Assembly (NCBI RefSeq): GCF_902652985.1
Contig: NC_047015.1
Location: 41,478,001 to 41,542,000, forward strand
Direction: 5' to 3'
DNA length: 64,000 nt
DNA from: Pecten maximus
Taxonomy: Eukaryota
In this document: positions 1 through 30,097 of the stretch, piece after piece
Layout of the letters: each line of letters opens with the position of its first letter
Numbering within the stretch: the first letter of the stretch is position 1
Program-made: the position numbers and the translations under genes
The notes under the pieces: model-generated
What the model saw: the letters and a program-made list of their open reading frames with translations, nothing else
Database searches by the model: none
What the model was told of the DNA's origin: nothing

Positions 1-1220
1 ATATTTTGGATAATGGAGGATGCGTGGATGTTATATACTGTGATTTAAGAAAGCCTTTGATAAAGTCCCTCATCAGCAACTCGTACATAAACTCTCAAAA
101 TATGGAATTGCTGGCCAATTTTCCTCTTGGATTACAACCTTTTTACTTGGAAGAAAATAACGAGTCTCAGTGAACGGTGAAACATCACAATGGAATCCAG
201 TAATAAGCGGTATACCACAAGGATCTGTGTTGGGACCACTTCTCTTTGTATTATATATAAATGATACGCTGACGTAATGAGCAATGAAACCGGAACTTAT
301 CTTTTTGCCGACGACACGAAAGCATTTAGAACAATTAATAATGAACAGGATTGTAAAATTCTTCAGCAAGATATATTTTCGTAAAACAAATGGTCAGAAA
401 CCTGGAAACTAAAATTCCATCCAGAAAAATGCAAAATGATGCGTGTCGGATATACAAATATGGATCCCTATAACTACAAACTGAAAGAAAGTGCTCAACC
501 ATTTGTTGACTCAGAAAAAGATATCGGTGTCACCATAGATAATAACTTTACATTTGATAAACAGATCTGCGACAATGGAGTACATAAACCCCATACAGCT
601 TTAAAATGTTATACACGGTTTTAGTAAGACCTCATATCGAGTATGCGGTCCAAGTCTGGTGTCTTCATCTGGTGAAATATATAGAAACAATAGAGAATGT
701 TCAACGTCGAGCAACAAAACAAGTTCCTGGTCTGTCTAATCTGTCATACTCTGAACGTCTGCAAAAACTGTCACTACCAATGTTAGCATATAGACGGTCT
801 CGTGGAGACATGATTGAGGTCTATAAAATCATCTCCGGAAAATATGACAAGGAAGTCGCAAAATTGTTTTCCGTAAATGTAGGGCAAATCACTCGCGGAC
901 TTAACTTAAAAATACATAAAGGATTCTCAAGATTAGATGTCAGAAAATATTCTTTCACGCAGAGAATTGTGGATATGTGGAATAGTCTCCCATTTGATGT
1001 TGTAAATGCCATAATTAAACAATTCGAATAAAAACTTGATGAACATTTGAAAAATCAGCCACAAAAGTACTGTTTCAAAGAGAAAATCAAGCTGTGAACT
1101 AAACAATTATCTACTACTAAAAAGTATTTCAATAACTTTATTACGAGCTGACAATCAAAGGATGTAAATCCTGTACATATTTCATGAATGCTGTCAGAAT
1201 AAATCTATGTATCTATGTAA
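1..1220 (+). mobile_element. Decayed CR1/L2-clade LINE, 3' part (reverse transcriptase domain, 3' UTR and tail)
   Basis: Frameshifted RT motifs [27 protein letters not shown] and YLFADDTK (about 50-320). The C-terminal ORF 606-1031 reads LVRPHIEYAVQVW...IENVQRRATK...RRSRGDMIEVYKI...FTQRIVDMWNSLP, typical of CR1 ORF2. AATAAA and a (TCTATGTA)2 tail lie at about 1198-1219. Confidence 0.9.
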
Positions 1221-10780: not shown

Positions 10781-13700
10781 CTACAAGTATATAATGGACT
10801 TCACGGTATAAAAACGGCGATAGTTCGGAGAAACTTCAGATTCAAACTGATTTAGGTTGCCTTCGAATTCGGTGAGGATTTTGGATAATTCGCTGCCGTA
10901 TGTGTCTTTGCTTGTGACACTAGCTGTAGGAGAGGGACAGCGACTATAGTCAGGAAGTGGATCTGTCGTGCGTGTGCACGTGTAAGGCGTACTTGATCTT
11001 GGTGCACTAGGCTTTGGTGATTGCACATTGTCTTGAGAACTCCTTCCAGATGATTTCAAGACATTTGCGTCAGACCCGAAGAATGCACTGTCATAGCTCT
11101 CACTGTCTACTCTGTGTTGTTCCTCCCTGGTATTGTTGTTTATGTTATCGTCGTAATCTGGTGGAACCTCGTCACCCGCCCTATAGTTCGACTGTAAGAG
11201 GACTTCGTTATTACGAACAATCCAATTCTCCACTGCAATGTTTGTTTTTGTTGGATAATATCCGTATTGATTGTTGGCAAGATCGCATTCTCCCGTTTCT
11301 TTGAAGCAGCAATCACACAAAAGTCCGTCTGTTTCCGATTCACAGTGGTTTCTGAGCGCCTCAGCTACTTCTAAATCGTAGTATGAGACATCATCTGTCC
11401 TTTCACTCTCCGTGTCCTTGATGTAGGCAGGGCATACTTCCTGTTGATCGGAATTGACGTAGTTAATATAAAGTGACTCTGTAACGCCCTGTAAAGGCGT
11501 ATACTCGGTTGATGAATCGTGTGAAGTCTCAACAACTGGTTGAGCGTATTCCGTTTGTTCTACCCGATTCACTTCCTTTGGTGGAGTTTCTGATACCAGT
11601 TTGGTCAGTGATTCCTAAAATCATATAACAATAGTATAAATTCTATCAAAGAAACAATAATAACGATAATTATATCACAGAAATATTATGTATTAAATAC
11701 ACGTTTTGATACAATATAAACACTATTTGAAGAAAGTTAAAAATAGTTTGCTCTGGAAATTATAATGAACCAATCATGTTAGCATAGACCGTATATCTAA
11801 TGTATAATTTTGATGACAATATGCCTCTTTAAAAGGTATCAAATAGCAAAAATGAATACCTTATAATTTTGAACAAACTGTGCAAAATGTCCAAACAGTT
11901 CTGAAGGCTCCATGTTTTCCATGTTCTCCCCAAACATGGAGCAAACACGTTTATAGACGTTATATGTGCGCTGATGCGATCGCCTCAACATCCAAATCTG
12001 TTCTTCACCTTCTTCATAAAAGTTCTAGTATACCGTTAAAGAAACCATCATTTTTATTTTTTAATAGGACGCCATCATCAATACAAGATAACAGGATACA
12101 GAGAAAGGAAATCACGTATATAATTACATTTGGTATGTAAGAAAAAGTAACATGTTAACTTCATTTGATATATATCGGGATATAATGAGTATTAACTATA
12201 AAGTGATATTTACTACCAAAGCTCCCAGAAGTATTATGAGTGAAAAAACTACAAAAAAAACCCCCTTGGAAATCCTTATTCAAATAACCAGAAATGCGAT
12301 TTCGGGCAGACAGAAACAAAGCGGAAACGTGGCAAAGGTCATTGGTAAATTTGGAATGTGGAACATGATAAAGGATACAATAAGGCGGTCTGTATGACCT
12401 CCCGTCGTCTGGTTCATGTGGTCGCCGACTGTCCGGATTCCATCGTCTAGTTCCTGGACCAGAGATGTCAGGCGAGAGAAGCTACCTGTGATAGGTAATA
12501 CAACACATACTCAACGCAGGCGATACTATGTGTTAACAGAACGTGTTCAACATTAACATGTAAACATGTTCAGCGTTTAAAACACCACGCGTTAAATAAA
12601 CTTTTGTTCAGTGGAGGTAATTAAACAGCAAAATATAAAAAAGTAGAGTCATAAACAATAAGAGTCAGACGTTAATATAAGATAAATCGTAAAAATATTT
12701 GTATATTAACAAGCATTGCATTTTTGCAAAAAAAAAAAAAAAAAAATGAAAAAACCCATCCATTTATGGTACGCAATGTTAAAATTGAGAAATATAATAA
12801 AACCATGACGTAATTATGTGGCTTTGTACAAGGCTTTCAGATCGGACAATAACTCCGTAAATTCGCATTGGGCATGTTCACAGCAGGGCAAAATTAAGGG
12901 TGAACTTATATAGTTAGAATGGTAAATGTACATACATTTATATAAATATATATTAATTGGTGTTATATTCATGTCATTTAATAGTTCGTGTTAGGCCAAG
13001 AAGAGAGTAAAAAGAAATATCTGTAGCTTATTCATAACTTTGATACCTTTGGCCACAGGTAACAATTCGAGGTCTCGGTACCAGTGAAGGATATCGGGAT
13101 GTTTTCGATTTATCATCGTAACGATGAAATCGAGGAGAGTCTGCGTCTTGTCACTTGATTTCATGTCTTTCAGCTGAAAACAAATGTTTTTGTTTTGTTT
13201 ATATCAATCTGCGTAATAAAAAAAATGAATGCAAGTCCGGACTATTAATTAAACAATCGTGTGACAAGCACTATACTGTAAGCGTACATATTTTAGCGGT
13301 AATATCATTTTAGCGCTTTTCGCGTTGGCAGTTTTGCGCTAAATTTTAAATTAGCTAATTGCTTTTTCTATATTCTATTAAGAAATAATCTTGAGGAGCT
13401 AAATTCAGCATTGTGCTAACGTCTTAAAAATGAAAATACGTTAAAACTTGAAAGCACCGAAGTCCGTTTACTGAACGACGTAATGTCGGTAATGACATTA
13501 ACACCAAAATTTATGTCTACAATCTGATGAAACATTTACCGATATACGTTTTGAAATAGTATTCATTTGTATATGTTAGTTGATGCTTAGCGATGTATAT
13601 TTTGATAAGCGATCTAGGTGTTTATATGGGCGACGTTTTACCGGTTATACATTAATATACAGTGTAGACTTAGTGATATACAATTTGATATACAGCCAAC

Positions 13701-16700
13701 TTACCGATGATAGACAAGATAGTTTGAAGCCCCGAATGGAACCTCTTTTAAAGGTATTGATGTAATTGCCGAGATACAGGATGATCTGGGTAAAAAAATG
13801 AAACAGGCTTGAGTTCTTCTTCAATGTAAACATAATTACGACAGCGTGTTTTCTAGATAATTGAAATATAAAACTTTATTAAGATTTGTTTTAAGGTAAC
13901 ATTACCTCGAACACTTTCCTGATCCGGTCACAGTTCAGCAAAGAAGATGCGGATTTGTGAATGCTATTTATCTCCTGAAATAGATACAAAGGTATTCATT
14001 TTATTCACAACACCTTCCCATGATATATCTTATGCAATTGAGTGTTCTGAATTTATTTCCAAAAGAAATAATTGTTGCAAAGTTTATCGACAGTTTAGCG
14101 TGCTGTACGACTTATCTCCCCTTTTCCTGTCGAACTACACTTACCGGTGAGAGGGCGTCAACTCTCTTCTGGAACTGATTCATGAAGGCCATACAACTCA
14201 GTTTTCCTTCCAGATCCGAAACGGATACTAGCTGTAAATAGTACATAATGTTACATATAAGAGTACTGCACTGGTTCCAACTATATCAAATATATTAATT
14301 TTTGAAATCATGTTTTAAATAAGTTAATCAAATTGAATTATTGAATTAAATGTTTATTATTTTTATTTAACATAAGTTGTCAGAATGAACGGCATGGTGA
14401 AATTTTACCTGAACCATGAGTTGTTCCGTTTCTGCCAGGTCATTATAGTTACACGCTAGTGACATCACGTCTCTCAGCTAATAAAGAAAGAAATGTTTGT
14501 TGTCATGGAAATATTAATAACCAATTAATAGTCTTAAGGTCTTTATTTACATGTATAACACGTATAACTGATCGAAGATACAGAACAGACAAAATGCATC
14601 TGAATCACTGTCAAATCACTGTCAATTATTATCAAATATGCTAAAAAAAAAAAAAAAAAATCAATACAGTATATCAAAACTTATCGAATGCAATTCTTAT
14701 ACAAATGTAAATAGGGTAAATATAATGTACCTCGGTCTCCGTTGGAATGAACCGCGACAGGAGTTCGGCACTGTCCGCATCCACTCTCTCAAAGTCATAT
14801 TTGTCCAGTGCTGCTTTCAGGGCCTCCGCTGTCAACCCAATCTTCCGCCGGGCTAGCACTGTAAGGTACAAAACAAATCCATATTGACAAATATCTCAAC
14901 CATTTAGTCTATTTAGCATATACATATTTTTAGATCGATAAAAGTGACTTTGTGTAATCATAATTCCATTCGATAGATACTTATATCTCGTGTTTCATTA
15001 TCTTTAAAGTCTATTGACATAGATATGTTGAAGCTGAATATAGAGAAAATATAATACTTTATCTTTGATGTGTCAACGCGGTGTTATTTACAACCTTTGT
15101 TTTTTAGCATACTTACGCAAATTATGTGCTCTAGAACTTTCCAGAAAAGTTCGTTTGTTTTCCCGGCGTCGACGTCGCGATTCTGGAAATGGGAATACAC
15201 CGTATTTTCTATATAGGTTTTAAAACACAAATATCACAAATGTCATCACACATAATTGAAAATTGGGAGATTATTCTAAATATCTATATTGTTAAAGGGA
15301 CTAAATGGTTAGATTTCAATAATTTCTATATGCATTTGATTTCCGGAAAGCGTTGTGATACTTGAAATTAAATTGTTTACAAAATTATGACACTTTTTGT
15401 GAAATATTGGCAATGTTTATCAACTTCGAATTATCGCTGAACAACATTTGTTGTTTACATCGGAGAGAGCCGAGTGCGTCACATGATTTCAGTATCCTCG
15501 CTTTCACCCGACGAAAATGGAATCGAGGTAAGTGTAAACATTTTGTCACGTGGATGTAGAACGTGATTACTTTGCAATCGGATGGTTTATACGGTCTCGA
15601 GGAGTACCGATCGTTATTCACTATTGTTGATTGAGAGCTCAAACAGATAAAAGTACGTATAACCCTCAGAAGTAGCATGTAAAATTTTGACATTCGGCAA
15701 TGGGGCCTCCAAAGGGGACTTCGTTTCGTTTATTGTGATGTAGGAAAACATTATTATTATTCATCTTTGAAGTGTTCATTCAATTCAATATCGTCCCAAT
15801 GTAAGAAATCGAAGTGTAAACTCAAATTGGAATTGCTATTTTGTATGACCGTAAGTGCTATGACGACGTAACAGCTATACAGTTGTAACCAGACATATAT
15901 GTCTCTGTTGTAACATACAAAAAAAATGCCGATCACTAACGTGATAGGCCTACCCAAAATTGAATTCGATTTAAATCTGATTAATGGAGATCTACATTGT
16001 AAATTGATTGCACTGAGAGCAATACACAAACTGTAGGTCTAGATATAAGAAAAAATAATTCAGTTTTACACAGAAATTGTAATTTATTCGACTGTTTGAA
16101 TCCCTCGGCCTTTCAGATTGACATCCTAATTAAAAATCGGAACCTTCATTGAGTTAGTAGTTTTTGCACTTAACTTTGCTTCTGTTTAATGATTGTAGTT
16201 AAAATGTTGTTGAAAGCCTTGTACGTTATTTAATGAATTATATAATTAAATATGTACGTTAAGAAATGGATAACACTGATACATGGTAAAAGATGGATAT
16301 GAGTATTGTTGATTATCTCATTTATATCAATAATGTATTATCTCACTTATATCAATTTATCATCGATATAAATGAGATATTTAATTCACAATACTGATGT
16401 CCATACTGTTTTAATAATTCAATGATTAGCTGACAGTCTCAATGATAGTCATGGATTGAGGAATTGGACTATTCTCAAGTTTACCTACATGTACAATTAT
16501 GTTCATTTATATGTTACATGTTCTTGTATTTCAGTCAACCTCAATATCATCTTGATTGGCAAGTCAGCAGAGCATGCAGTCTAATTATATATGGGTAGAG
16601 GTCAAGGTGACAGGAGTAAAGAAAATATAGAAATCGTGAAAATTTAAGCATTTCATTGGTAATCACTTTGTCTGTTTGCCCATACACATAAGCTGAATTA

Positions 16701-19700
16701 TCTTATTTCAAGGAAGTTGTTTTGACACCTGTGCAGTGAAAAGGTTTGATATAAAATCAAAATAAATTACATTACATCATTGAATTCATGGAAACCTTTT
16801 GTTTTATGTACCATATTTCATATGCAGCAGTTTTCACTGATACTGGCTTATGTAAAACAAGAGGCCAATTGGCCTTAATGGTCACCTGAGTTTTGAAATA
16901 TTCAATTTAATTGACCCTTTTTAGCCTCGCCCAGAAGGTCAGTCAGGGCCAACATGTGCATGCGATCAAGCTGTCATCCCATGCTGATAATGTTAATGAA
17001 GTTAGAATGAATTTCAATAGAAATCAAACAAATGCTGATCAAAATTGTGATTTCCCTATATAAATTTAGTCCCCCATCAGGGTCATGAAATTCACAATTT
17101 TTGTTAAAGACACCAGTATATGATTCTACCATATCTGCGAGCTGAGAAGATCTTTCAAATTTTAGTCAATTTGACCCTTTTTGACCCTGCCCCTCAGGTC
17201 CCTGGAGGTTGGGACTATGTAATCCACAGTTTTGGTTGACCTTTTGACCATGAAAGCTTACTGACAAATTGTTTAAAGACAAGCAAGGAAAGACGACGGA
17301 CAAAAGTCAGTTAGAATAGGTCACTTCATACTTCATCTCAGTTGACCTAAAGATCCAACCCTAATTTATCAGAATATCAACAGAACAGTGACTTATGATG
17401 TTGATAATACACTAAACAGTAAATGCACAGTACAATTTGTCTCACAAATAGTTTTGATATAGAAAACACTGAGAAAAGTCAAACATGCAAATAAAGAATT
17501 TACCACATTGTATTTATTGTCTTGCTCAGATGTAAGCATTGGCATCAATGACTAGAGAAAGTTGACTGCCATGACTAGTGACTTAACATCAATGACAATT
17601 GTTGGCATCAGTGATAATTGAGTGTTGACATCAATGACTATTGAGTATAATGGAGTGTTGACATACATGACTGGAGTATTATGGAGTGTTGACATACGTT
17701 ACTAATGAGTACTAGTGAGTGTTGTCATCCATGACTATTGAGTATTAGTGAGTGTTGACATAAATGACTATTGAGTACTACTACTAGTGAGTGTTGTCAT
17801 CCATGACCATTGAGCACTAGTGGGTGTTGACATCAATGAATTTTGAGAGTTTATAAATTACTTGTGAGTGTTAACATGAATATTTCAATAGTGCACACAT
17901 GTACAGCTATGAATAATCATTTTTGACTAAGCATTTAAATTTCAGACCAGACAATGTTGTTTGTCTCTTGAGATTATATAAATTTTGAAATTAAGGCTGC
18001 ACTGATTATCATATGACATTAATGGAATGGATAACAGCTAAGCTATTATAGTAACATTATACCAATAAACTAAATACTACTCAAATTTAAGTTACATTTC
18101 AAACATTTTTCTACTTTTGAACTACCTCTCCCAACAATGGTTCAAACTACAAGTGGACTAGATGTAATTCTTGAAAAAAAAAATGAGTTAAATCCTTTTT
18201 TTTTTTGCTATACCAGGTAATTCTCTTATTTTGCCCCGAAAGGTGCCACTCAGATGATGGTGACGCTTCATTTATGCAACATATAACATTGCCACATAAT
18301 TCTCCTGACCAAATTTCATCAAATCCATTTAATTGTTCAGGACTAGTAGAATTTCTAAAAGAGTTTCCATTCTGACCAGTGAACTAAAAAAATGTTAATA
18401 ATAAGACCATTACAAAGGGCAATAACTCTGCAAACTACTGTCAAAAACTACTGTCCAATAATTTCCATTTTTGAAGTTGTCTGAGATCTTGTCGATATAT
18501 GGCTGCTTATAAAGTTTTATTAAATTTGGTATATTCTGACATTTACTCAAGTTATTCAAATATTGTGTTCACAATGTTGACAGACGAATGCCGGACGCCT
18601 CAGTATGGCATACTCACCTTGGTCCTTCGGACCAGGTCAGCTACTAAACGTAAGGACAGATATTCAAAAGTAATAGTCTCTGGAACGTGATTAGTCTCAA
18701 AATGTCAATTATTCCCATTCATCTTAATTGGGATTTCTTCTCCTCTACCATTTGGGCAGTAGATGGTGGAGGAGCATGGGCTAGGAGTTTGAATCTTCTG
18801 GGATCTATTTGATGCAAGGGTTTTGGCTAGATATTCCAGTTCTATCTGTTATTCTGTTGGCCACTATCAGATTGATGAGTCCCTGGATGTGTTGGTATGT
18901 CCTTTCCACCTTGTACGGCACTTTTTGTCCTCCAAGAACTTTTGTGTTATAAATCCTGTGATATCTATAAGAAGAAGAAAAGATATTTTCTTACACAAAA
19001 TCAATGTAATTTCCAGTTACACAAACCAACAAAATGTGCAAAATTGGCAATATTATAATCATGCCTTATATTGAAACATAGCAGTCATTATTTATCATGC
19101 AAAGATGGCTCTTCACGATATTTTGTCTGATTTTTCATCAAATAATTCGCCTGTCAACATTTTCTCAACTTACATTCAAGCTTAATTAGCCTCTACACAC
19201 AATCAAGGCTTCTGCTGGGTCTTAAATATGTATACCAGTATCAATAGTTGAAAAATGTAAATTCAACACAACATATGTTGTGTTTCGCTTACGTTTTCGG
19301 GCCTAATGACTATCTTAAGGCATGATATTGTATATATGTGACATCATAATGTGGTATCCAAGACGTCAAATAAATGAAGCGTATGAAGATGGCCATTAGG
19401 CCCGAAAACACCATGGGAAATAACTAAACTAATTATGGTGTTATTGCATTAATTTGGTGAATCAATCACTATCAATATATAATGCAAAAAAAAAAAAAAT
19501 ACTAAATTCACGAAATTGATACTCCAGAAGTTTTTCAATCTCCAATTGCACAATATCTTACCAAATACACTAAGAATTCAGCAATTTTCAACAAGTGTTA
19601 AAAGTAGAGGATACATGTGTAACAGGAGATCAGGAGATAACGTAGCGTAAGCGGCCAGACCGGGGTTCCAACCCGGGCCTCCGAACACCAGCCGGATGCT

Positions 19701-22700
19701 CTACCAACTATTGAGCTACCTGGTCACTGATGATCGACTCAGTCCAGTCCCGCTACACATGCATGCAGCTCATGCATGAATTATAGTGGTCAAAACTGAT
19801 TGGTTCACTTATTCTGATTCAAATTATTAATTACAAAAAAAATCCATTATTGGTAGCTGCTAAACAAAAACAATATTTCAAATCCATTCATTTTAATTAG
19901 AAAAAAAAATTGTTATCGAAAATTGATCGGTTGGTGGTATCTGATTACAAACCAATACATGTATAGGAATTGGTTATGTTTTCAAACTGATTATATACAA
20001 TATGTGTCATATACTATAGACCAAAACATGTAATCAAACTTGACGCCTATAGATACGTATATATATCTACATTTTTTTGTATATCAATATGCAAATCATA
20101 ACGTAATAACAGTTCACAGTGATACATGACTTGTGTTGTATAATTATGAGAATTTTGAATGTTAATTAGCATCGACAGAAACTATTCCACGACTTTTTAA
20201 TTATACGACTCAATAAATAAATAATGTTCTTCCTTCGCATCCAAATGCTAATGATTTATATAAATATTTGTTAATTAATGGCCTCAAGGATTAGTAATTA
20301 ATTAACTATGAAAAATACCTAAGTGCGACTAGTAATAGTGTCGTCCGTAGTGGCTGCATGTACTCCATGTCGCCTGTGGTCATCTTCATTGCTTGGCTTC
20401 AGTTTCTTTATGACCAGATCTACATTATACGTACGCTCTAGATCTCAGGCTTGCTTTCAAAACTGTACAACGGAATATTAATAACACAATGTAAACTTAA
20501 TGTGTAATATACAGGCAGTCTAACAAAAGCATAAAGTCATCAAGTTTACTTTCTGGTATAATACGATTAATTTGACAAATGTCAAAATTCCCTCTTGGGC
20601 GCCCCCTTTGATTTGTATTCCCATTTAGGACATGTTGAGGGGCGAGTACAAAACCCGGAATGCACTCAGGCGTGAAGAGATTTTTGTTGATTTATTGTGT
20701 TTATTAGGTCATAATTCCGTTATTACTGAATGGATTTTTGTTCGGATACCAGCAGTAAAAGGGTTGATTTATCCCCTTTAAAATGGTATAAGTTATATTT
20801 AACAGTATCAAAAATTAGAAGTGAAAGTGGTGGCCGGAATGAACCCATACGGAAAAAAATGTCGATATTTACAACTGTTTTCGTTATAATAAATACCCAT
20901 ATCTCAAATATTACTGAACAGATTTTTGTTCGGGAACCACACAAAAACGGAGAATTTAGTACTCTTTCACATGATATAAACTGTTTGAATACATGTTCGA
21001 TATTACTTTCAAAAGTGGTGGCCGGAATGAATTGATGTGGTGTGAAAAAATAGCAAAATCGTCAAAGTTACATGTAAATTTCCATCTTTATTGGTCAATA
21101 ACTCTTTTATTACTTAACCGATTTCTGTTCGGAACACACTCTAGACAAGATAATTTTATAGGCTTTAAGCTGATATAACTTTTATTAATATTCATTACAA
21201 ATTCGGTGCAAAAGTGGTGGCCGGAATGAACCTAGTTGAAATTCACGGACGCCATTTTACGAGTATGTCCAAGCCGATACCACACTACGTCTATACTAAA
21301 ACAACATACTATATAGGCCTATACGGTACACCGGTCACCATGACCAGGTAACGGGCGGCTCGTTCACACCTTGATGAATATAATTAATCTTTAGATGACC
21401 GATGGCCGATGACTGTTAACTAGGAAGCCAATTATATACTACTTATAAGATAATCCAGTCCAAGACAGTGAATCAGTTCAAGAACCTAATGTTAGTAAAG
21501 TTAGTGAATCTAAAGAAGTAGACATATCAAACGATCTCAAAACCGACAAACAACAAATAACTGATAATATTCAAGAAGGTTTAGAAAATAAAAGTCAACC
21601 ATCAAATAAAAATCTGTCTCAGGTATGTTTAGCTAGATTAGTTTTAGAAAATAATGGTGTCACTTTTGTTGAAAATCAAAAAGCGTTCGTTGTATGTGGG
21701 AACAACAATTCTAAAGAAACTTGTCAATGTCCGTCTACTGGAACTTGTTACCATATCATGGCTGCTAGAATGAAAATGGGGGATGAAATTGTAGACAGTA
21801 AAAGAACCGTTAGTTTAAAACAGTTATCTAAAAACAGTTTAAAAAGAAACGATAAAAAATCAGGCAGAAAAAAACGAAGATGTAACGATTATGATAGGGA
21901 TGTAATTGCGGCACCTGATTCGGTTACTCTTAATCAAGATAATGATACAATAATGGTAGATAGTACGCCACCTAAAACGCCAAAATCTACGAAAAAACTA
22001 GGTCCATCAAAAACTCCTATTCAACAAATAAAGACTTCCTACAAATCAATCTATTAAAAAGGAAACTTTAAGTCCTGTAAAAAAGGAAACCACGTGTTCC
22101 AAAAAGAAATTAAGATTTCAGTTAGAAGATTCTGATACATGTAATATTAGCGAAGATAATGTACAACTTGTTAAAAAACGTAAAGTCGCTGATAACACAG
22201 AGTCGCTACACTTAACTAAATAACTTAAATGAAAGCCATAAACTTAAAATTTCCAATAAAGAATTGATTTGTTCTGATATTATAAATGAAGTACAATCAA
22301 TAATGTCTAAACAATTTCCTGGTTTGAATGGTTTTCAGTTGACAAACTTAGCTCCAGTATATGATTCAAATAAATGCAAATGGAAAAACCAAATAGCTTT
22401 TCAATCTGTAGTTTCACCTTCTGTTCAAATTCACCATAATGGAAGAGACCACTGGGTTACAAGTTTTCAAACAAGTAATGGAAATATATCCCTTCTAGAC
22501 AGTTTAGCATCAAAAGAAAATCATACTGTAACAGTTAATACTCCGTCAATCGAACTTCAGCTTTGTAGTATTTACGGTAATAATAAAAGTAGTATCCCAG
22601 TCAAAATTTTAGATGTACAGGATCAAAATAATGGCTACGATTGTGGGCTTTTTGCAATAGCTAATATGGTAGAATTTTGTTTTAAAGGTAATTCATTCAA

Positions 22701-25700
22701 ACAAAAAACTAACTTCATTTGAAATCAAATGCGGGATCACTTAATTTGGTGTTTAGATAAAGGTTATTTCATGCCGTTTCCACAGTTCGTTAAAATAGCA
22801 TCACAACTAAAAAAGGCAAGTAATAACAGTATCACAATAAATTGTAGTTGTTCTTGTGGGTTTCCAGATTGGATGGATGAAATGATTGGCTGTGACTGGA
22901 GAACAGGTAGGGTACATTGCAAAACGTGGAAACATAAAGAGTGTGCAAATCTTACAGAGTCTGAAGAACAATGAAACGAAAATAGAATAAAAAGATTACA
23001 ATAAAAAAATTAAATTCATTTAAATAAAACAATAAAGCAAAAATAAACTGACTCTATGAAAATAAAAGAATAAAAAAAAAAAAAAAAAATAATGGGCTCT
23101 TAAGTAGAACTGCGTCCACGTCGCAGAGCCTGGTAACATTCTAACATAATGGCTAAAAGTTCTACAGGTAATTTTTCCTTGCTCGAGTTACTTCCCTTGT
23201 ATTAAAGAACTAGCATGTAGCTTGTGTTGTTTTTACATTCAACTTTTGTTCAAAATGGCGTCCGTGAATTTCAACTAGGTTCATTCCGGCCACCACTTTT
23301 GCACCGAATTTATAATGAATATTAATAAAAATCATATCAGCTTAAAGCCTATAAAATTATCTTGTCTAGAGTGTGTTCCGAACAGAAATCGGTTAAGTAA
23401 TAAAAGAGTCATGGACCAATAAAGATGGAAATTTACATGTAACTTTGATGATTTTGCTATTTTTTTACACCACATCAATTCATTCCGGCCACCACTTTTG
23501 AAAGTAATATCGAACATGTATTCAAACAGTTTATATCATGTGAAAGAGTACTAAATTCTCCGTTTTTGTGTGGTTCCCGAACAAAAATCTGTTCAGTAAT
23601 ATTTGAGATATGGGTATTTATTTTAACGAAAACAGTTGTAAATATTGACATTTTTATTCCATATGGGTTCATTCCGGCCACCACTTTCACTTCTAATTTT
23701 TGATACTGTTAAATATAACTTATACCATTTTAAAGGTCATAAATCAACCCTTTTACTGCTGGTATCCGAACAAAAATCCATTCAGTAATAACGGAGATAT
23801 GTCCTAATAAATACAAAATATTATGAAAAATCTCTTCACGCCTGAGTGCATTCCGGGTTTTGTCCTCACCCCATGTTGAGGCCAATACCAAGCGATTCAT
23901 GCCGTGTTAACACTACGTGACCTTTCTTAAGCTTAATCTCGATATCAGTTGTTACCATTTATGATAATTATGTATCATCAAGTACTATCAAGTCATCATC
24001 TGGGCGTACACGACAGTTGATCTACGAAACATCGAAGTCCAGTGCTGTCAACTAACCTGTTCAAGGCATTAGCTTGGCCAAAGGAGGGTCTGTTTTAATC
24101 CCTTCGGTCTTTTTTAACTGATGCCATCTGCTTGCTCTGTCTCTAAGATACGTGTTCGTCTTTGTGAAGTTAAAATCACGTTCTCGATTATTCGTTTCTT
24201 CTTGCTCTCGGTTAAAACTGATTCAGGACCCTTCCACTTAGATCGGGTGTTCGCCATTTTTGTTATGATGTTTCCAATTTCCCGCATCGCGCATGCGCAA
24301 AGGTACGCAGAAGTATTTGTTTACACACATCGAAAAATAATAATATGAAATAACTACTAGGTTAGTCAAATTTATTTTATTTTTTTCATTAAATTTTAAC
24401 AAATTGTTATGGACACTTTTGAAATGTATAATTAACATAAAGTGCTTAACTTTTTACATCATTTTAAATCGTATATCCTTTTTTATATATTATTTAAGTG
24501 GAAATCTAGCCATTTAGTCCCTTTAATGATTTAGCATTTTCGCGTACATGTACTTAATTCCTATTGTCTGAACATTTTTCTAAATTTCTGAAACAGCAGA
24601 TGATCATTCTATGGTAGGTAGTGTAAAAGAAGGAATAAAAACTTTAATTTTACCTGGAAACTTGTTCTGTGTGATAGGTGGTTTTATCGCTTCAAGACGA
24701 AACGCTGCTTCAAAAGCGTCTATGTCTTCATCGCGTAGAACACATACACCGCTCAAGGTCTGAAATAAAGAACTTACACATACCAGATTGGTGCCATATC
24801 ATCATGTAAGGATATACAATGCGTGTATATTGTATCCTTAGATTAAATCAATTTTAAAAAATTAAAAAAACAACCTATGTAGAGTTAACTCGAATGTCTT
24901 CAAATATTTTAAATCCTAAAACAAAGTTTTTTTCTCTTTCAAGAATTTTCCTACACATGTGAGTTGGATTTAAGGAGCTACTACCTGGAAAATAGTGTCC
25001 TGCACATCGTGAAGGGGTTTCCAATAGAGAAACGGAAAGTTAGTCCCCGTGTTTGGTTTTCTTTGGGACCCGGAACATGGTGGGAGTGGCGGTGGATCTG
25101 CAACATCACATGAGTGTTCAGTAACGTGATGAACATGCGCCAATATGTATTGATTGATAAAGTCATGTCAATATGTACGTCTCGGTAAGGACATGTCAAT
25201 TAACGTTCAAAAACGAATCATAATAGAAGTAAAATAACGCTACGTCAATAATTAACGCCATACCAAAGAAAATAGATCAACTAGGACACAATCGTCAGAA
25301 AAGAAACTTACAACTAAAATAGCTCTACGTCAGTTTGTAACATTAATTATCACACCTAAATTTGATAATATGTCTGTAATAATATAGACGTCAATATGTT
25401 TGTACTTACCTGGGACGTTTGGGTGGGTACTTTCTTCACCAGTTAGTGACTTCACGGACGCGTTCCCCGAATCAATGACGCTTGAGTTCTTTATGCTCTA
25501 TTTGTAAAGAACACACTCGTGGGTACGAATAACACTTTGATATTAATACCGGATTTAAGGGATATTGGCAGAACATTTCAGGGACGAAATTAAACTGACG
25601 GTGTAAAGTAAACCTGCATGCGGAATATTATCATTAGGAAGTCAACAACTACATACTGTACTGATGTATGTAATGCATACTAATTGATTTCTATATTCAC

Positions 25701-30097: not shown

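What the first reader, a model, noticed from the sequence alone, without database searches (positions are those of the whole stretch)
10781..30097. Hidden 22-exon atypical formin: MWH-like DID, almost no FH1, altered FH2 actin-contact residue
Seen: the exons splice into one ~1000-aa frame that the ORF track largely misses. Only about 30 non-proline residues and a single PPPLPP separate the short post-FH3 helix from FH2, so the profilin-binding FH1 and most of the coiled coil are missing. In FH2 the lasso Trp, GNYxN and GFKL are kept. The conserved knob Ile (NLAI in FMNL, equivalent to Bni1 Ile1431) reads as Leu (RAHNLLLARRK). Established: FH1 drives profilin-actin elongation, and that Ile is needed for nucleation and barbed-end binding. 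Inference: the DID (SFVREFLRKPLSGISLLLSLLKAIQ...KRLLTDEHDCLLCL) looks closer to Drosophila Multiple Wing Hairs than to FMNL. This may therefore be an FH2-retaining MWHF formin acting as a capper, bundler or inhibitor, intermediate between FMNL and the FH2-less insect planar-polarity effector.
Basis: partly seen in the sequence, partly recalled or inferred. Interest (0 to 1): 0.75.

Follow-up and report, generated by a model that had tools for sequence, protein, structure and literature searches.

The report
An annotated scallop MWHF-type formin
This is a real, expressed 22-exon scallop gene for a formin of the already described MWHF subtype, already in public annotation as 'formin-like protein 3'; its very short profilin-binding region is normal for that subtype, and its one odd actin-contact residue is a mild change seen only in scallops.

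Summary
The minus strand carries 22 GT-AG coding exons (30094..10781). They spell, letter for letter, the 1002-aa public protein 'formin-like protein 3 [Pecten maximus]'. The gene is therefore missed only by a bacterial-style ORF track, not by annotation. Transcript-like contigs confirm 10 of the 21 junctions and show no extra exon between FH3 and FH2.

The domains are GBD-DID-DD, one PPPLPP track 18 residues before the lasso Trp, a full FH2, and a disordered tail. The knob Ile is Leu449.

The MWHF reading is supported. The DID tree groups it with an FH2-less beetle GBD/FH3 protein and away from FMNL (AU p = 2e-4). The same genome has a separate true FMNL. The FH2 tree agrees, but only weakly (AU p = 0.15).

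MWHF has been a published subtype since 2016 and includes an oyster member. In my sample one or two proline tracks are the family norm. Leu at the knob is conservative and occurs in all four scallops.

Extras: bivalve FH2 evolves faster than DID, FH2-less mollusc kin exist, and a C-terminal motif is conserved.

The parts
30011..30094 (-). coding exon 1 (aa 1-28; ATG at 30094)
   Evidence: Exact match to P0005. The contig loose end at 28389 equals window letters from 30013 on.
28227..28387 (-). coding exon 2 (aa 29-82, GBD)
   Evidence: Junction 28065|28227 in an X4 contig.
27927..28065 (-). coding exon 3 (aa 82-128, start of DID: SFVREFLRKPLSG...)
   Evidence: Junctions 27597|27927 and 28065|28227.
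27547..27597 (-). coding exon 4 (aa 129-145, TDEHDCLLCLK)
27056..27154 (-). coding exon 5 (aa 146-178)
   Evidence: No contig was laid on it.
26633..26782 (-). coding exon 6 (aa 179-228, DID/FH3)
   Evidence: X2 contig piece 26631-26737.
26265..26381 (-). coding exon 7 (aa 229-267, FH3)
   Evidence: Junction 26379(+2)|26631.
25922..26062 (-). coding exon 8 (aa 268-314, DD / start of helix)
   Evidence: Junction 26062|26265.
25771..25797 (-). coding exon 9 (aa 315-323, 27 nt)
   Evidence: Junctions 25797|25922 and 25497|25771.
25410..25497 (-). coding exon 10 (aa 324-353, disordered linker)
   Evidence: pLDDT below 50 for residues 332-372.
24985..25097 (-). coding exon 11 (aa 353-390: PPPLPP track and FH2 lasso)
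   Evidence: Junctions 25097|25410 and 24759|24985 in X2, the latter also in X4.
25078..25095 (-). the only polyproline track (PPPLPP, aa 354-359): a minimal FH1
25021..25023 (-). lasso Trp378, with Pro374 at -4 and Phe389 as second aromatic (features shared by FMNL and MWHF)
   Evidence: Features as described.
24654..24759 (-). coding exon 12 (aa 391-426)
   Evidence: Contigs of X1, X2 and X4. The loose end at 24654 equals window 15153-15182.
15117..15182 (-). coding exon 13 (aa 426-448, ...RAHNL), after a 9471-nt intron
14731..14858 (-). coding exon 14 (aa 448-490, knob helix)
14854..14856 (-). codon CTA = Leu449 at the conserved knob Ile site
14409..14477 (-). coding exon 15 (aa 491-513; EQL where other formins have EQF)
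14145..14231 (-). coding exon 16 (aa 514-542)
13906..13974 (-). coding exon 17 (aa 543-565)
13705..13785 (-). coding exon 18 (aa 566-592: GNYIN 13756-13770, GFKL 13720-13731)
13047..13173 (-). coding exon 19 (aa 593-635; Lys597 in DMKSS pairs with DTKST of FMNL3)
12379..12485 (-). coding exon 20 (aa 635-670)
11860..12024 (-). coding exon 21 (aa 671-725, end of FH2)
10781..11614 (-). coding exon 22 (aa 726-1002 plus stop): predicted-disordered tail
   Evidence: Six runs hold 49-78% of its sampled words.
10853..10894 (-). conserved C-terminal motif SELSKILTEFEGNL (aa 966-979), preceded by PDYS (946-949) and followed by the ...YTVKSIIYL end
   Evidence: Modelled as a helix at 964-976 but with low pLDDT.

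Best explanation
The region is the scallop orthologue of the MWHF (multiple wing hairs-related formin) subtype. This is a Diaphanous-related formin with the architecture GBD-DID-DD, short helix, one-track FH1, FH2, and a long disordered tail.

Shown: the gene is intact, spliced as annotated and transcribed, and it encodes a full-length FH2 of normal fold.

Inferred mechanism:
- The FH2 dimerises through its lasso and post and binds actin barbed ends.
- There is only one profilin-binding track, 18 residues from the lasso Trp. The protein is therefore expected to nucleate actin or stay on barbed ends while adding little profilin-driven acceleration. This would make it a 'permissive' elongator like Delphilin or fly DAAM, not a fast elongator like DIAPH.
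- This trait belongs to the whole MWHF subtype, not to this gene alone.
- The N-terminal GBD-DID probably gives Rho-GTPase-dependent targeting or regulation.
- The knob Leu449 is a conservative lineage change that most likely tunes actin binding without abolishing it.
For: Gene model:
- The exon chain is identical to public protein P0005, with all introns GT-AG.
- Transcript-like contigs join exons 6 to 12 exactly as annotated and run on into exon 13. They also support junctions 1-2, 2-3 and 3-4.

Domains and fold:
- Pfam gives FH2 at 219 bits, full length, plus FH3 and GBD.
- The AlphaFold model has pLDDT about 85-95 for residues 30-330 and 80-92 for 440-733.
- Foldseek's top hits are FMNL3 FH2 (TM by target 0.77) and FMNL1 GBD-FH3 (0.68).

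Subtype:
- In the FH2 tree, FMNL plus the MWHF-like rows form a clade at 99/98. The 15 MWHF-like rows (bivalves, nemerteans, an annelid, echinoderms) separate from the 2 FMNLs at 94/89.
- In the DID tree, a 17-row clade at 95/94 excludes FMNL and contains the FH2-less beetle protein.
- AU tests reject beetle+FMNL (p = 9.5e-5) and molluscs+FMNL (p = 1.9e-4).
- The genome has its own FMNL on another contig. Its exon reads [20 protein letters not shown]. It scores 43.7 bits to FMNL3, against 23.9 for the window's equivalent exon. For 3 of its 4 exons the best hit is fish FMNL2.
- The lasso has Pro at -4 and Phe as second aromatic, as published for FMNL and MWHF.

FH1 as a family trait:
- There are 1-2 tracks in 10 of 10 MWHF-like rows scored, against 5-9 in 3 FMNL or DIAPH rows. 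The anchors failed for 6 of 19 proteins.

Precedent:
- Delphilin, with minimal FH1, nucleates actin and binds barbed ends without accelerating elongation (passages read, PMC6004577).
Against: - On FH2 alone the AU test does not reject bivalves+FMNL as one clade (p = 0.149).
- The trees hold only two named FMNLs (a fish and a nematode). They hold no DAAM, INF or FHOD and no Drosophila MWH.
- The beetle protein is taken as an MWH orthologue by inference only. It is FH2-less and sits in an arthropod cluster of 432 members. No source names it so.
- The closest solved structures and all source names say FMNL.
- No biochemical data exist for any MWHF in the library searched. The elongation behaviour is therefore pure inference.
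- Bivalve FH2 evolves unusually fast, which leaves room for a changed function.
Confidence: 0.82

Rival explanations
1. The FH2 is losing its classic role. The protein would work mainly through DID and its conserved C-terminal motifs, as insect MWH does. The fast-evolving FH2 (knob Leu, EQF changed to EQL, one proline track) would serve at most as a capper, weak nucleator or side-binder. On this view molluscs are following, in parallel, the path that gave ecdysozoans FH2-less MWH.
For: - Domain identities are reversed in bivalves. Scallop-oyster is DID 51% against FH2 36%, and scallop-nemertean is 40-43% against 34-36%. Non-bivalve pairs keep FH2 above DID, for example nemertean-sea star 45-48% against 33-36%.
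- Within scallops FH2 (73-76%) is no better kept than the disordered tail (74-75%), and less than DID (81-82% in the two full-length pairs; 71% over the 222 alignable residues of the N-terminally truncated Argopecten model).
- The scallop stem in the FH2 tree is long, at 0.91.
- Leu at the knob is found in 4 of 4 scallops. Ile is found in at least 17 of 18 non-bivalve rows, in 3 of 3 oyster or pearl-oyster rows, and in 7 of 7 readable paralogues of this genome.
- Mollusc kin without FH1-FH2 keep DID and the tail motifs (P0012, P0013 Ruditapes, P0014 Patella).
Against: - 15 of 18 near-invariant FH2 columns are kept, against 0-3 deviations in controls.
- There are no indels over 361 FH2 residues in two of the scallop comparisons and 2 gaps in the third.
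- The model of the FH2 fold is confident.
- The post-region Lys597 is kept.
- Transcripts contain the FH2 exons.
- Ile to Leu is conservative, whereas the known dead mutant is Ile to Ala.
Confidence: 0.13
2. It is a divergent second FMNL, a lineage-specific duplicate of FMNL, and not a member of MWHF.
For: - The best solved relatives are FMNL3 FH2 (179 bits against 97 for DAAM1) and FMNL1 GBD-FH3 (66 bits).
- Sources name it and its orthologues formin-like protein 1, 2 or 3.
- The AU test on FH2 does not reject bivalves+FMNL (p = 0.149).
Against: - The DID tree and two AU tests reject it.
- The ML FH2 tree puts it with nemertean, annelid and echinoderm proteins, apart from FMNL, at 94/89.
- It has one proline track and no recognisable FMNL-type WH2/DAD pair.
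- The published work says MWHFs were often mislabelled as FMNL.
Confidence: 0.04
3. It is an annotation artefact or a pseudogene.
For: Within this genome, the FH2 exons score weakly against Pfam compared with other formin loci (29.9 and 27.3 bits).
Against: - There is no stop or frameshift, and all 21 introns are GT-AG.
- Spliced contigs exist in two runs.
- Orthologues of the same length exist in three other scallop genera.
Confidence: 0.01

Closest known systems
MWHF subtype of animal formins (Pruyne 2016, PMC5047451; passages read)
   Same: - The architecture is G-DID-DD-FH1-FH2.
- The FH2 is adjacent to, but apart from, FMNL.
- The DID-DD groups with FH2-less MWH-type proteins.
- The lasso has Phe as second aromatic and Pro at -4.
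- There is no canonical DAD/WH2.
- The subtype is reported in molluscs (Pacific oyster), annelids, echinoderms and sponges.
   Different: - Scallop-only Leu at the knob.
- The shortest FH3-to-FH2 spacer in my sample (120-123 residues).
- Fast FH2 divergence in bivalves.
- A conserved C-terminal motif (PDYS ... LSKILTEFEGNL ... SIIYL) that the paper does not report.

I could not check whether the oyster protein P0011 is the paper's oyster MWHF, because the accession list is in a supplement, which is closed.
FMNL formins (FMNL1-3; structures 4eah, 4ydh, 4yc7)
   Same: FMNLs are the closest solved structures. They share the lasso features and the overall DRF architecture.
   Different: - This genome has its own FMNL elsewhere.
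- FMNL has 5-7 proline tracks, against one here.
- The DID tree and AU tests separate them.
- FMNL has Ile at the knob.
Insect Multiple Wing Hairs (MWH), here represented by the beetle FH2-less GBD/FH3 protein P0009
   Same: The DID-DD is 35% identical over 277 residues, at 131.6 bits. They fall in the same clade in the DID tree.
   Different: MWH has no FH1 or FH2, whereas this gene has a complete FH2. That P0009 is an MWH orthologue is my inference, because no source names it so.
Delphilin / GRID2IP (functional analogue only; PMC6004577, passages read)
   Same: Both have minimal FH1 with a short linker to FH2. Delphilin nucleates actin and stays on barbed ends without speeding elongation.
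   Different: It is a different subtype, with PDZ domains and no DID, and it has two tracks rather than one. The scallop protein has not been assayed.

Membership tests
MWHF formin subtype | FH2 domain falls in a clade next to, but separate from, FMNL | tested here: inconclusive
   The ML tree of 25 rows separates the 15 MWHF-like rows, including the window's protein, from 2 FMNLs at 94/89. The AU test does not reject bivalves+FMNL (p = 0.149).
MWHF formin subtype | DID-DD groups with MWH/MWHF proteins and not with FMNL, DAAM or DIAPH | tested here: met
   In the 24-row tree a 17-row clade at 95/94 excludes FMNL and DIAPH and holds the FH2-less beetle protein. AU tests reject molluscs+FMNL (p = 1.9e-4) and beetle+FMNL (p = 9.5e-5). 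There was no DAAM in the set.
MWHF formin subtype | Domain order G-DID-DD-FH1-FH2 | tested here: met
   Pfam gives GBD at 13-183, FH3 at 194-327 and FH2 at 365-725. PPPLPP is at 354-359.
MWHF formin subtype | Lasso: second aromatic is Phe, and Pro sits four residues before the first Trp (shared with FMNL) | tested here: met
   FPFLYW at 373-378 and DTIF at 386-389. Alignment to FMNL3. Feature as stated.
MWHF formin subtype | No DAD- or WH2-like motif after FH2 | tested here: inconclusive
   No DIAPH- or FMNL-type DAD aligned. A conserved amphipathic C-terminal motif does exist (aa 966-979). It is modelled as a helix, but at low pLDDT, so docking is not supported.
MWHF formin subtype | Species also encodes a distinct FMNL | tested here: met
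   A locus on contig C15 (L008, L011) has FH2 and FH3 exons that are closer to FMNL3 and to fish FMNL2 than the window's exons are.
FMNL formins | FH2 and DID-DD inside the FMNL clade | tested here: not met
   On FH2 alone the grouping is not excluded.
FMNL formins | Long multi-track FH1 | tested here: not met
   One track here, against 7 in fish FMNL2 and 5 in nematode FMNL.
Insect/nematode MWH proteins | GBD/DID-DD only, with no FH1 or FH2 | tested here: not met
   A full FH2 at 219 bits, present in transcripts.
Active FH2 (actin-assembling formins in general) | Knob Ile (Bni1 Ile1431 equivalent) and post-region Lys | tested here: inconclusive
   Ile is replaced by Leu449 and the Lys (K597) is kept. 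Only Ile-to-Ala is known to kill activity. The effect of Leu has not been tested.

The most novel reading that the evidence does not exclude
Mollusc MWHF genes are repeating the ecdysozoan route from formin to FH2-less MWH.
- In pteriomorph bivalves the FH2 evolves faster than the DID.
- Scallops have swapped the otherwise near-invariant knob Ile for Leu and keep a single proline track.
- In a venerid clam and a limpet the FH1-FH2 block is missing altogether, while DID and three tail motifs (VExW, DSAFxGS, PDYS..EFEGxL) persist.

The conserved C-terminal motif would then be the real partner of the DID, as a cryptic DAD-like element. The scallop gene could also make an MWH-like isoform, because skipping from exon 9 or exon 11 to exon 22 stays in frame.
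Probability: 0.15. Interest if true: 0.55.

Novelty: new member of a known kind. Interest (0 to 1): 0.3.

Why it matters
As filed, it matters little. It is a correctly predicted gene of a published formin subtype, and public annotation only names it imprecisely (FMNL3 instead of MWHF).

Its modest value is comparative. In the library I searched, the formin sense of 'MWHF' appears in only four records, and no MWHF has been assayed. The data here give three testable points:
- The subtype as a whole has a one-track FH1 at a fixed distance from the FH2.
- Bivalve FH2 domains are drifting, and some molluscs lack them.
- A conserved C-terminal motif survives even where FH2 is gone.

These points bear on how insect MWH, a planar-polarity effector, arose from a formin.

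Tried and rejected
- The representative search with exon 19 alone gave 4 hits at E <= 0.001. Only P0002 was a formin. The other three (P0001, P0003, P0004) matched in 6-11 short stretches and I did not follow them.
- Searching the own genome with the beetle protein P0009 gave nothing. Exon-sized pieces are too short for that query.
- tblastn of P0009 against the window plus the FMNL locus gave only two weak hits (E = 0.044 and 0.61). Both were in the window and none was in the FMNL locus. This points the right way but is too weak to count.
- The findings search by words 'formin FH2 FMNL' met nothing.
- Docking of the C-terminal motif on the DID was not supported. AlphaFold models it as a helix at pLDDT of about 40-50, with the whole tail near 30. 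The MSA had only 25 rows and the tool returns no contact map, so this is no disproof.
- In one search my anchors failed for 6 of 19 proteins: Argopecten, both oysters, Lamellibrachia, the unnamed P0021 and Octopus DIAPH2. The knob pattern in that script misfired in 2 rows and found none in 1. Knob states in this report come from the alignment and from reading. Oyster FH1 (one long proline run about 100 residues before the lasso) is read by eye.
- P0002 (Argopecten) was left out of the DID tree because it lacks the N-terminus. P0008 was left out for the same reason. P0028, P0031, P0032, P0035, P0037 and P0038 were never fetched. No DAAM, INF, FHOD or FMN sequence was available for the trees.
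- I did not ask for supplements because they are closed. Pruyne's S1 Table (accessions) and S1 Text (alignments) could show whether P0011 is the published oyster MWHF and how long the published MWHF FH1 regions are.
Full report
WHAT IS THERE. The window has no N. Its GC content is about 30-40%. It lies on contig C1 of a 918-Mb genome with 3983 contigs. A bacterial-style ORF list shows only fragments of the gene on the minus strand.

Ten stop-free pieces were run against Pfam. They gave Drf_FH3 (30.2 bits) and FH2 (17.3 and 34.3 bits). Exon 19 alone was run against 1.84 billion representatives and gave one formin, P0002 (992 aa, 73% identical over the exon). Starting from P0002, the word-index search returned six proteins. 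Among them was P0005, 'formin-like protein 3 [Pecten maximus]', 1002 aa.

tblastn of P0005 on the window gives 100% identity wherever an alignment does not run into an intron. A codon-by-codon walk then reproduces P0005 completely. It uses 22 exons from 30094 to 10781, and all 21 introns are GT..AG. Whole-length analyses used the stored public protein P0005 instead.

The gene is not hidden, because public annotation already holds exactly this protein.

TRANSCRIPTS. Six runs that are probably RNA hold 49-78% of the sampled words of the last exon. Four runs were laid on 24600-28450.
- One 988-nt contig of X2 joins exons 6-7-8-9-10-11-12 at exactly the annotated junctions.
- Contigs of X4 give junctions 11-12, 3-4 and 2-3.
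- X1 gave one piece on exon 12.
- X6 gave nothing.

The loose ends equal window 15153-15182, the end of exon 13, and letters from 30013 on, in exon 1. In all, 10 of 21 junctions have contig support. Junctions 4-5 and 5-6 had no contig, and junctions 13-14 to 21-22 lay outside the stretch laid. No extra exon lies between FH3 and FH2 in the one contig that spans that region. Contigs cannot exclude rarer isoforms.

ANATOMY.
- Pfam places Drf_GBD at 13-183, Drf_FH3 at 194-327 and FH2 at 365-725 (219 bits, profile positions 3-372 of 372).
- An AlphaFold model of P0005 was built from a 25-row alignment and has a mean pLDDT of 66. It is confident for residues 30-330 and 440-733. It has one helix at 294-331. 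Residues 332-372 are below pLDDT 50 and the tail from 735 to 1002 is near 30.
- Foldseek finds FMNL3 FH2 first and also FMNL1 GBD-FH3.
- The only proline track is PPPLPP (354-359), 18 residues before Trp378.
- In the alignment to FMNL3, Leu449 takes the place of the knob Ile, and the Lys of D-M-K-S-S pairs with D-T-K-S-T.

WHICH FORMIN. Pruyne 2016 defines nine animal subtypes (passages read). MWHF is described as follows:
- The architecture is G-DID-DD-FH1-FH2.
- It lies next to FMNL in trees.
- Its DID-DD groups with MWH.
- Its lasso has Phe as second aromatic and Pro at -4.
- It has no DAD or WH2.
- It is present in oyster, polychaete, sea urchin and sponge.
- Its members were often mistaken for FMNL.

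The window's protein has the lasso features.

The genome has 30 FH2 exon matches, which I group into 11 loci. One locus, on contig C15, is a true FMNL. Its exon reads [20 protein letters not shown]. Another of its exons scores 43.7 bits to FMNL3, against 23.9 for the window's equivalent exon. For 3 of its 4 exons the best hit is fish FMNL2, and for the fourth it is a DIAPH1 by 2 bits.

Two further searches supplied relatives. They were oysters, a pearl oyster, nemerteans, an annelid, sea stars, a sea urchin, one fish FMNL2, one nematode FMNL, DIAPHs and plant formins.

In the FH2 tree (25 rows), FMNL plus the MWHF-like rows form a clade at 99/98. The 15 MWHF-like rows separate from the 2 FMNLs at 94/89. 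The AU test, however, does not reject bivalves+FMNL (p = 0.149).

In the DID tree (24 rows), a 17-row clade at 95/94 excludes FMNL. It contains the beetle FH2-less GBD/FH3 protein P0009, inside a 12-row protostome set at 99/99. AU tests reject beetle+FMNL (p = 9.5e-5) and molluscs+FMNL (p = 1.9e-4).

The N-terminal 335 residues score 131.6 bits to P0009 and 66 bits to FMNL1. P0009 itself scores 46 bits to FMNL1. P0009 sits in an arthropod cluster of 432 GBD/FH3 proteins without FH2. Calling it an MWH orthologue is my inference.

On this evidence I file the gene as MWHF. The DID evidence is strong. The FH2 evidence only leans that way.

IS THE FH1 UNUSUAL? Not within its family. My script counted tracks with at least four prolines.
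- It found 1 track in 3 scallops, Pinctada, 2 nemerteans, 2 sea stars and the urchin, and 2 tracks in one sea star.
- It found 7 in fish FMNL2, 5 in nematode FMNL and 9 in a DIAPH1.
- The last track lies 18-23 residues before the lasso Trp in 8 of the 10 MWHF-like rows. The exceptions are the urchin at 43 and Pinctada at 86.
- The anchors failed for 6 of 19 proteins.

Scallops are the extreme only in the short spacer, 120-123 residues from the FH3 motif to the Trp against 187-263 in non-bivalves. This reflects a shorter coiled coil.

The Delphilin paper states that mammalian formins have 2-19 stretches (passages read). It also reports that Delphilin, with two stretches and an 11-residue linker, nucleates actin and stays on barbed ends but does not accelerate elongation. 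That is the best available functional analogy. It is an inference for this protein.

IS THE KNOB CHANGE UNUSUAL? Yes, but it is mild. In a 25-row FH2 alignment, 18 columns are the same in at least 17 of 18 non-bivalve formins, plants included.
- The knob column is Ile there and in 3 of 3 oyster or pearl-oyster rows, and Leu in 4 of 4 scallops.
- The window's protein deviates at 3 of the 18 columns (I449L, F510L, A550S). Leave-one-out controls deviate at 0-3.
- Seven of seven other formin loci of this genome in which the knob exon could be read have Ile.
- The mutant known to abolish actin binding and assembly is Ile to Ala (passage read in PMC6337911). I found nothing on Leu.

UNEXPECTED EXTRAS.
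1. Domain rates are reversed in bivalves.
   - Scallop-oyster is DID 51% against FH2 36%.
   - Scallop-nemertean is 40-43% against 34-36%.
   - Nemertean-sea star is 33-36% against 45-48%.
   - Among scallops, FH2 (73-76%) is no better conserved than the disordered tail (74-75%). It is less conserved than DID (81-82% in the two full-length pairs; 71% over the 222 alignable residues of the N-terminally truncated Argopecten model). FH2 has no indels in two comparisons and 2 gaps in the third.
2. Three mollusc proteins keep GBD-DID-DD and the tail motifs but have no FH1-FH2. They are Ruditapes (1164 aa), Patella (622 aa) and an unnamed 699-aa protein found on a 2428-nt contig, which therefore looks like a transcript. 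They nest within the mollusc clade.
3. The tail ends in a motif conserved from molluscs to nemerteans: PDYS, then LSKILTEFEGNL, then a ...SIIYL-like end. Pruyne reports no DAD in MWHF. Silkworth et al. state that MWHFs have DID and DAD. My model gives no support for docking, so the matter is open.
4. By the exon lengths, skipping from exon 9 or exon 11 to exon 22 keeps the frame. No read shows such a joint.

VERDICT. This is a new, unremarkable member of a known subtype that is already annotated. The modest comparative leads listed above are the only novelty. In the library searched, 'MWHF' in the formin sense occurs in four records. No paper combines scallop, formin and FH2 in a relevant way, as 5 hits were all irrelevant by title.

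Noticed in passing
window 20639-23872 (inside intron 12 of the formin gene): A 3.2-kb insertion with about 620-nt terminal inverted repeats (arms 404 nt at 98% and 221 nt at 93% complementary). It carries plus-strand ORFs, one of which (22264-22722) looks like a Ulp1/C48 protease by eye.
   Followed up: partly
window 29562-29981 (intron 1): A tandem array (period 146, 2.3 copies, 95% matches; also read as period 46 x 5). Its units repeat the end of exon 1 and the first intron letters: translated, ...SIEGKWQIICNQVSSY against the exon's ...STEEKWKIIFNQ.
   Followed up: partly
P0012, P0013 (Ruditapes philippinarum), P0014 (Patella vulgata): Mollusc relatives that keep GBD-DID-DD and the tail motifs but lack FH1 and FH2. 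This could be a loss parallel to the origin of insect MWH, or these could be FH2-skipping isoforms.
   Followed up: partly
window 10781-11000 (aa 940-1002) and the C-termini of P0006-P0016: A conserved C-terminal module (PDYS, then an amphipathic LSKILTEFEGNL-type helix, then a ...YTVKSIIYL-type end). It is shared by molluscs and nemerteans. It is not reported in the MWHF paper passages I read.
   Followed up: partly
P0002 (Argopecten irradians model), residues about 400-520: The public model repeats the exon-16 peptide (LQLVSVSDLEAKLSCIAFM...) six times and lacks the N-terminus. This is probably a tandem exon duplication in that assembly or a model artefact. The window has one copy.
   Followed up: no
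P0017 (Lamellibrachia satsuma), within FH2: A five-fold repeat of DIDVTKGGEFETV is inserted in the FH2 of the annelid relative.
   Followed up: no
own genome, contig C6 at 33.80-33.81 Mb (-) and 33.90-33.91 Mb (+), and at 18.48-18.50 and 18.70-18.72 Mb: Two pairs of neighbouring formin loci, each with FH2 and FH3 exon matches. This suggests local duplicates among the 11 FH2 loci I count.
   Followed up: no
window 606-1031 (+): A 141-aa ORF whose sequence (…LVRPHIEYAVQVW…) looks, from recall, like the end of a retrotransposon reverse transcriptase. It was not searched.
   Followed up: no
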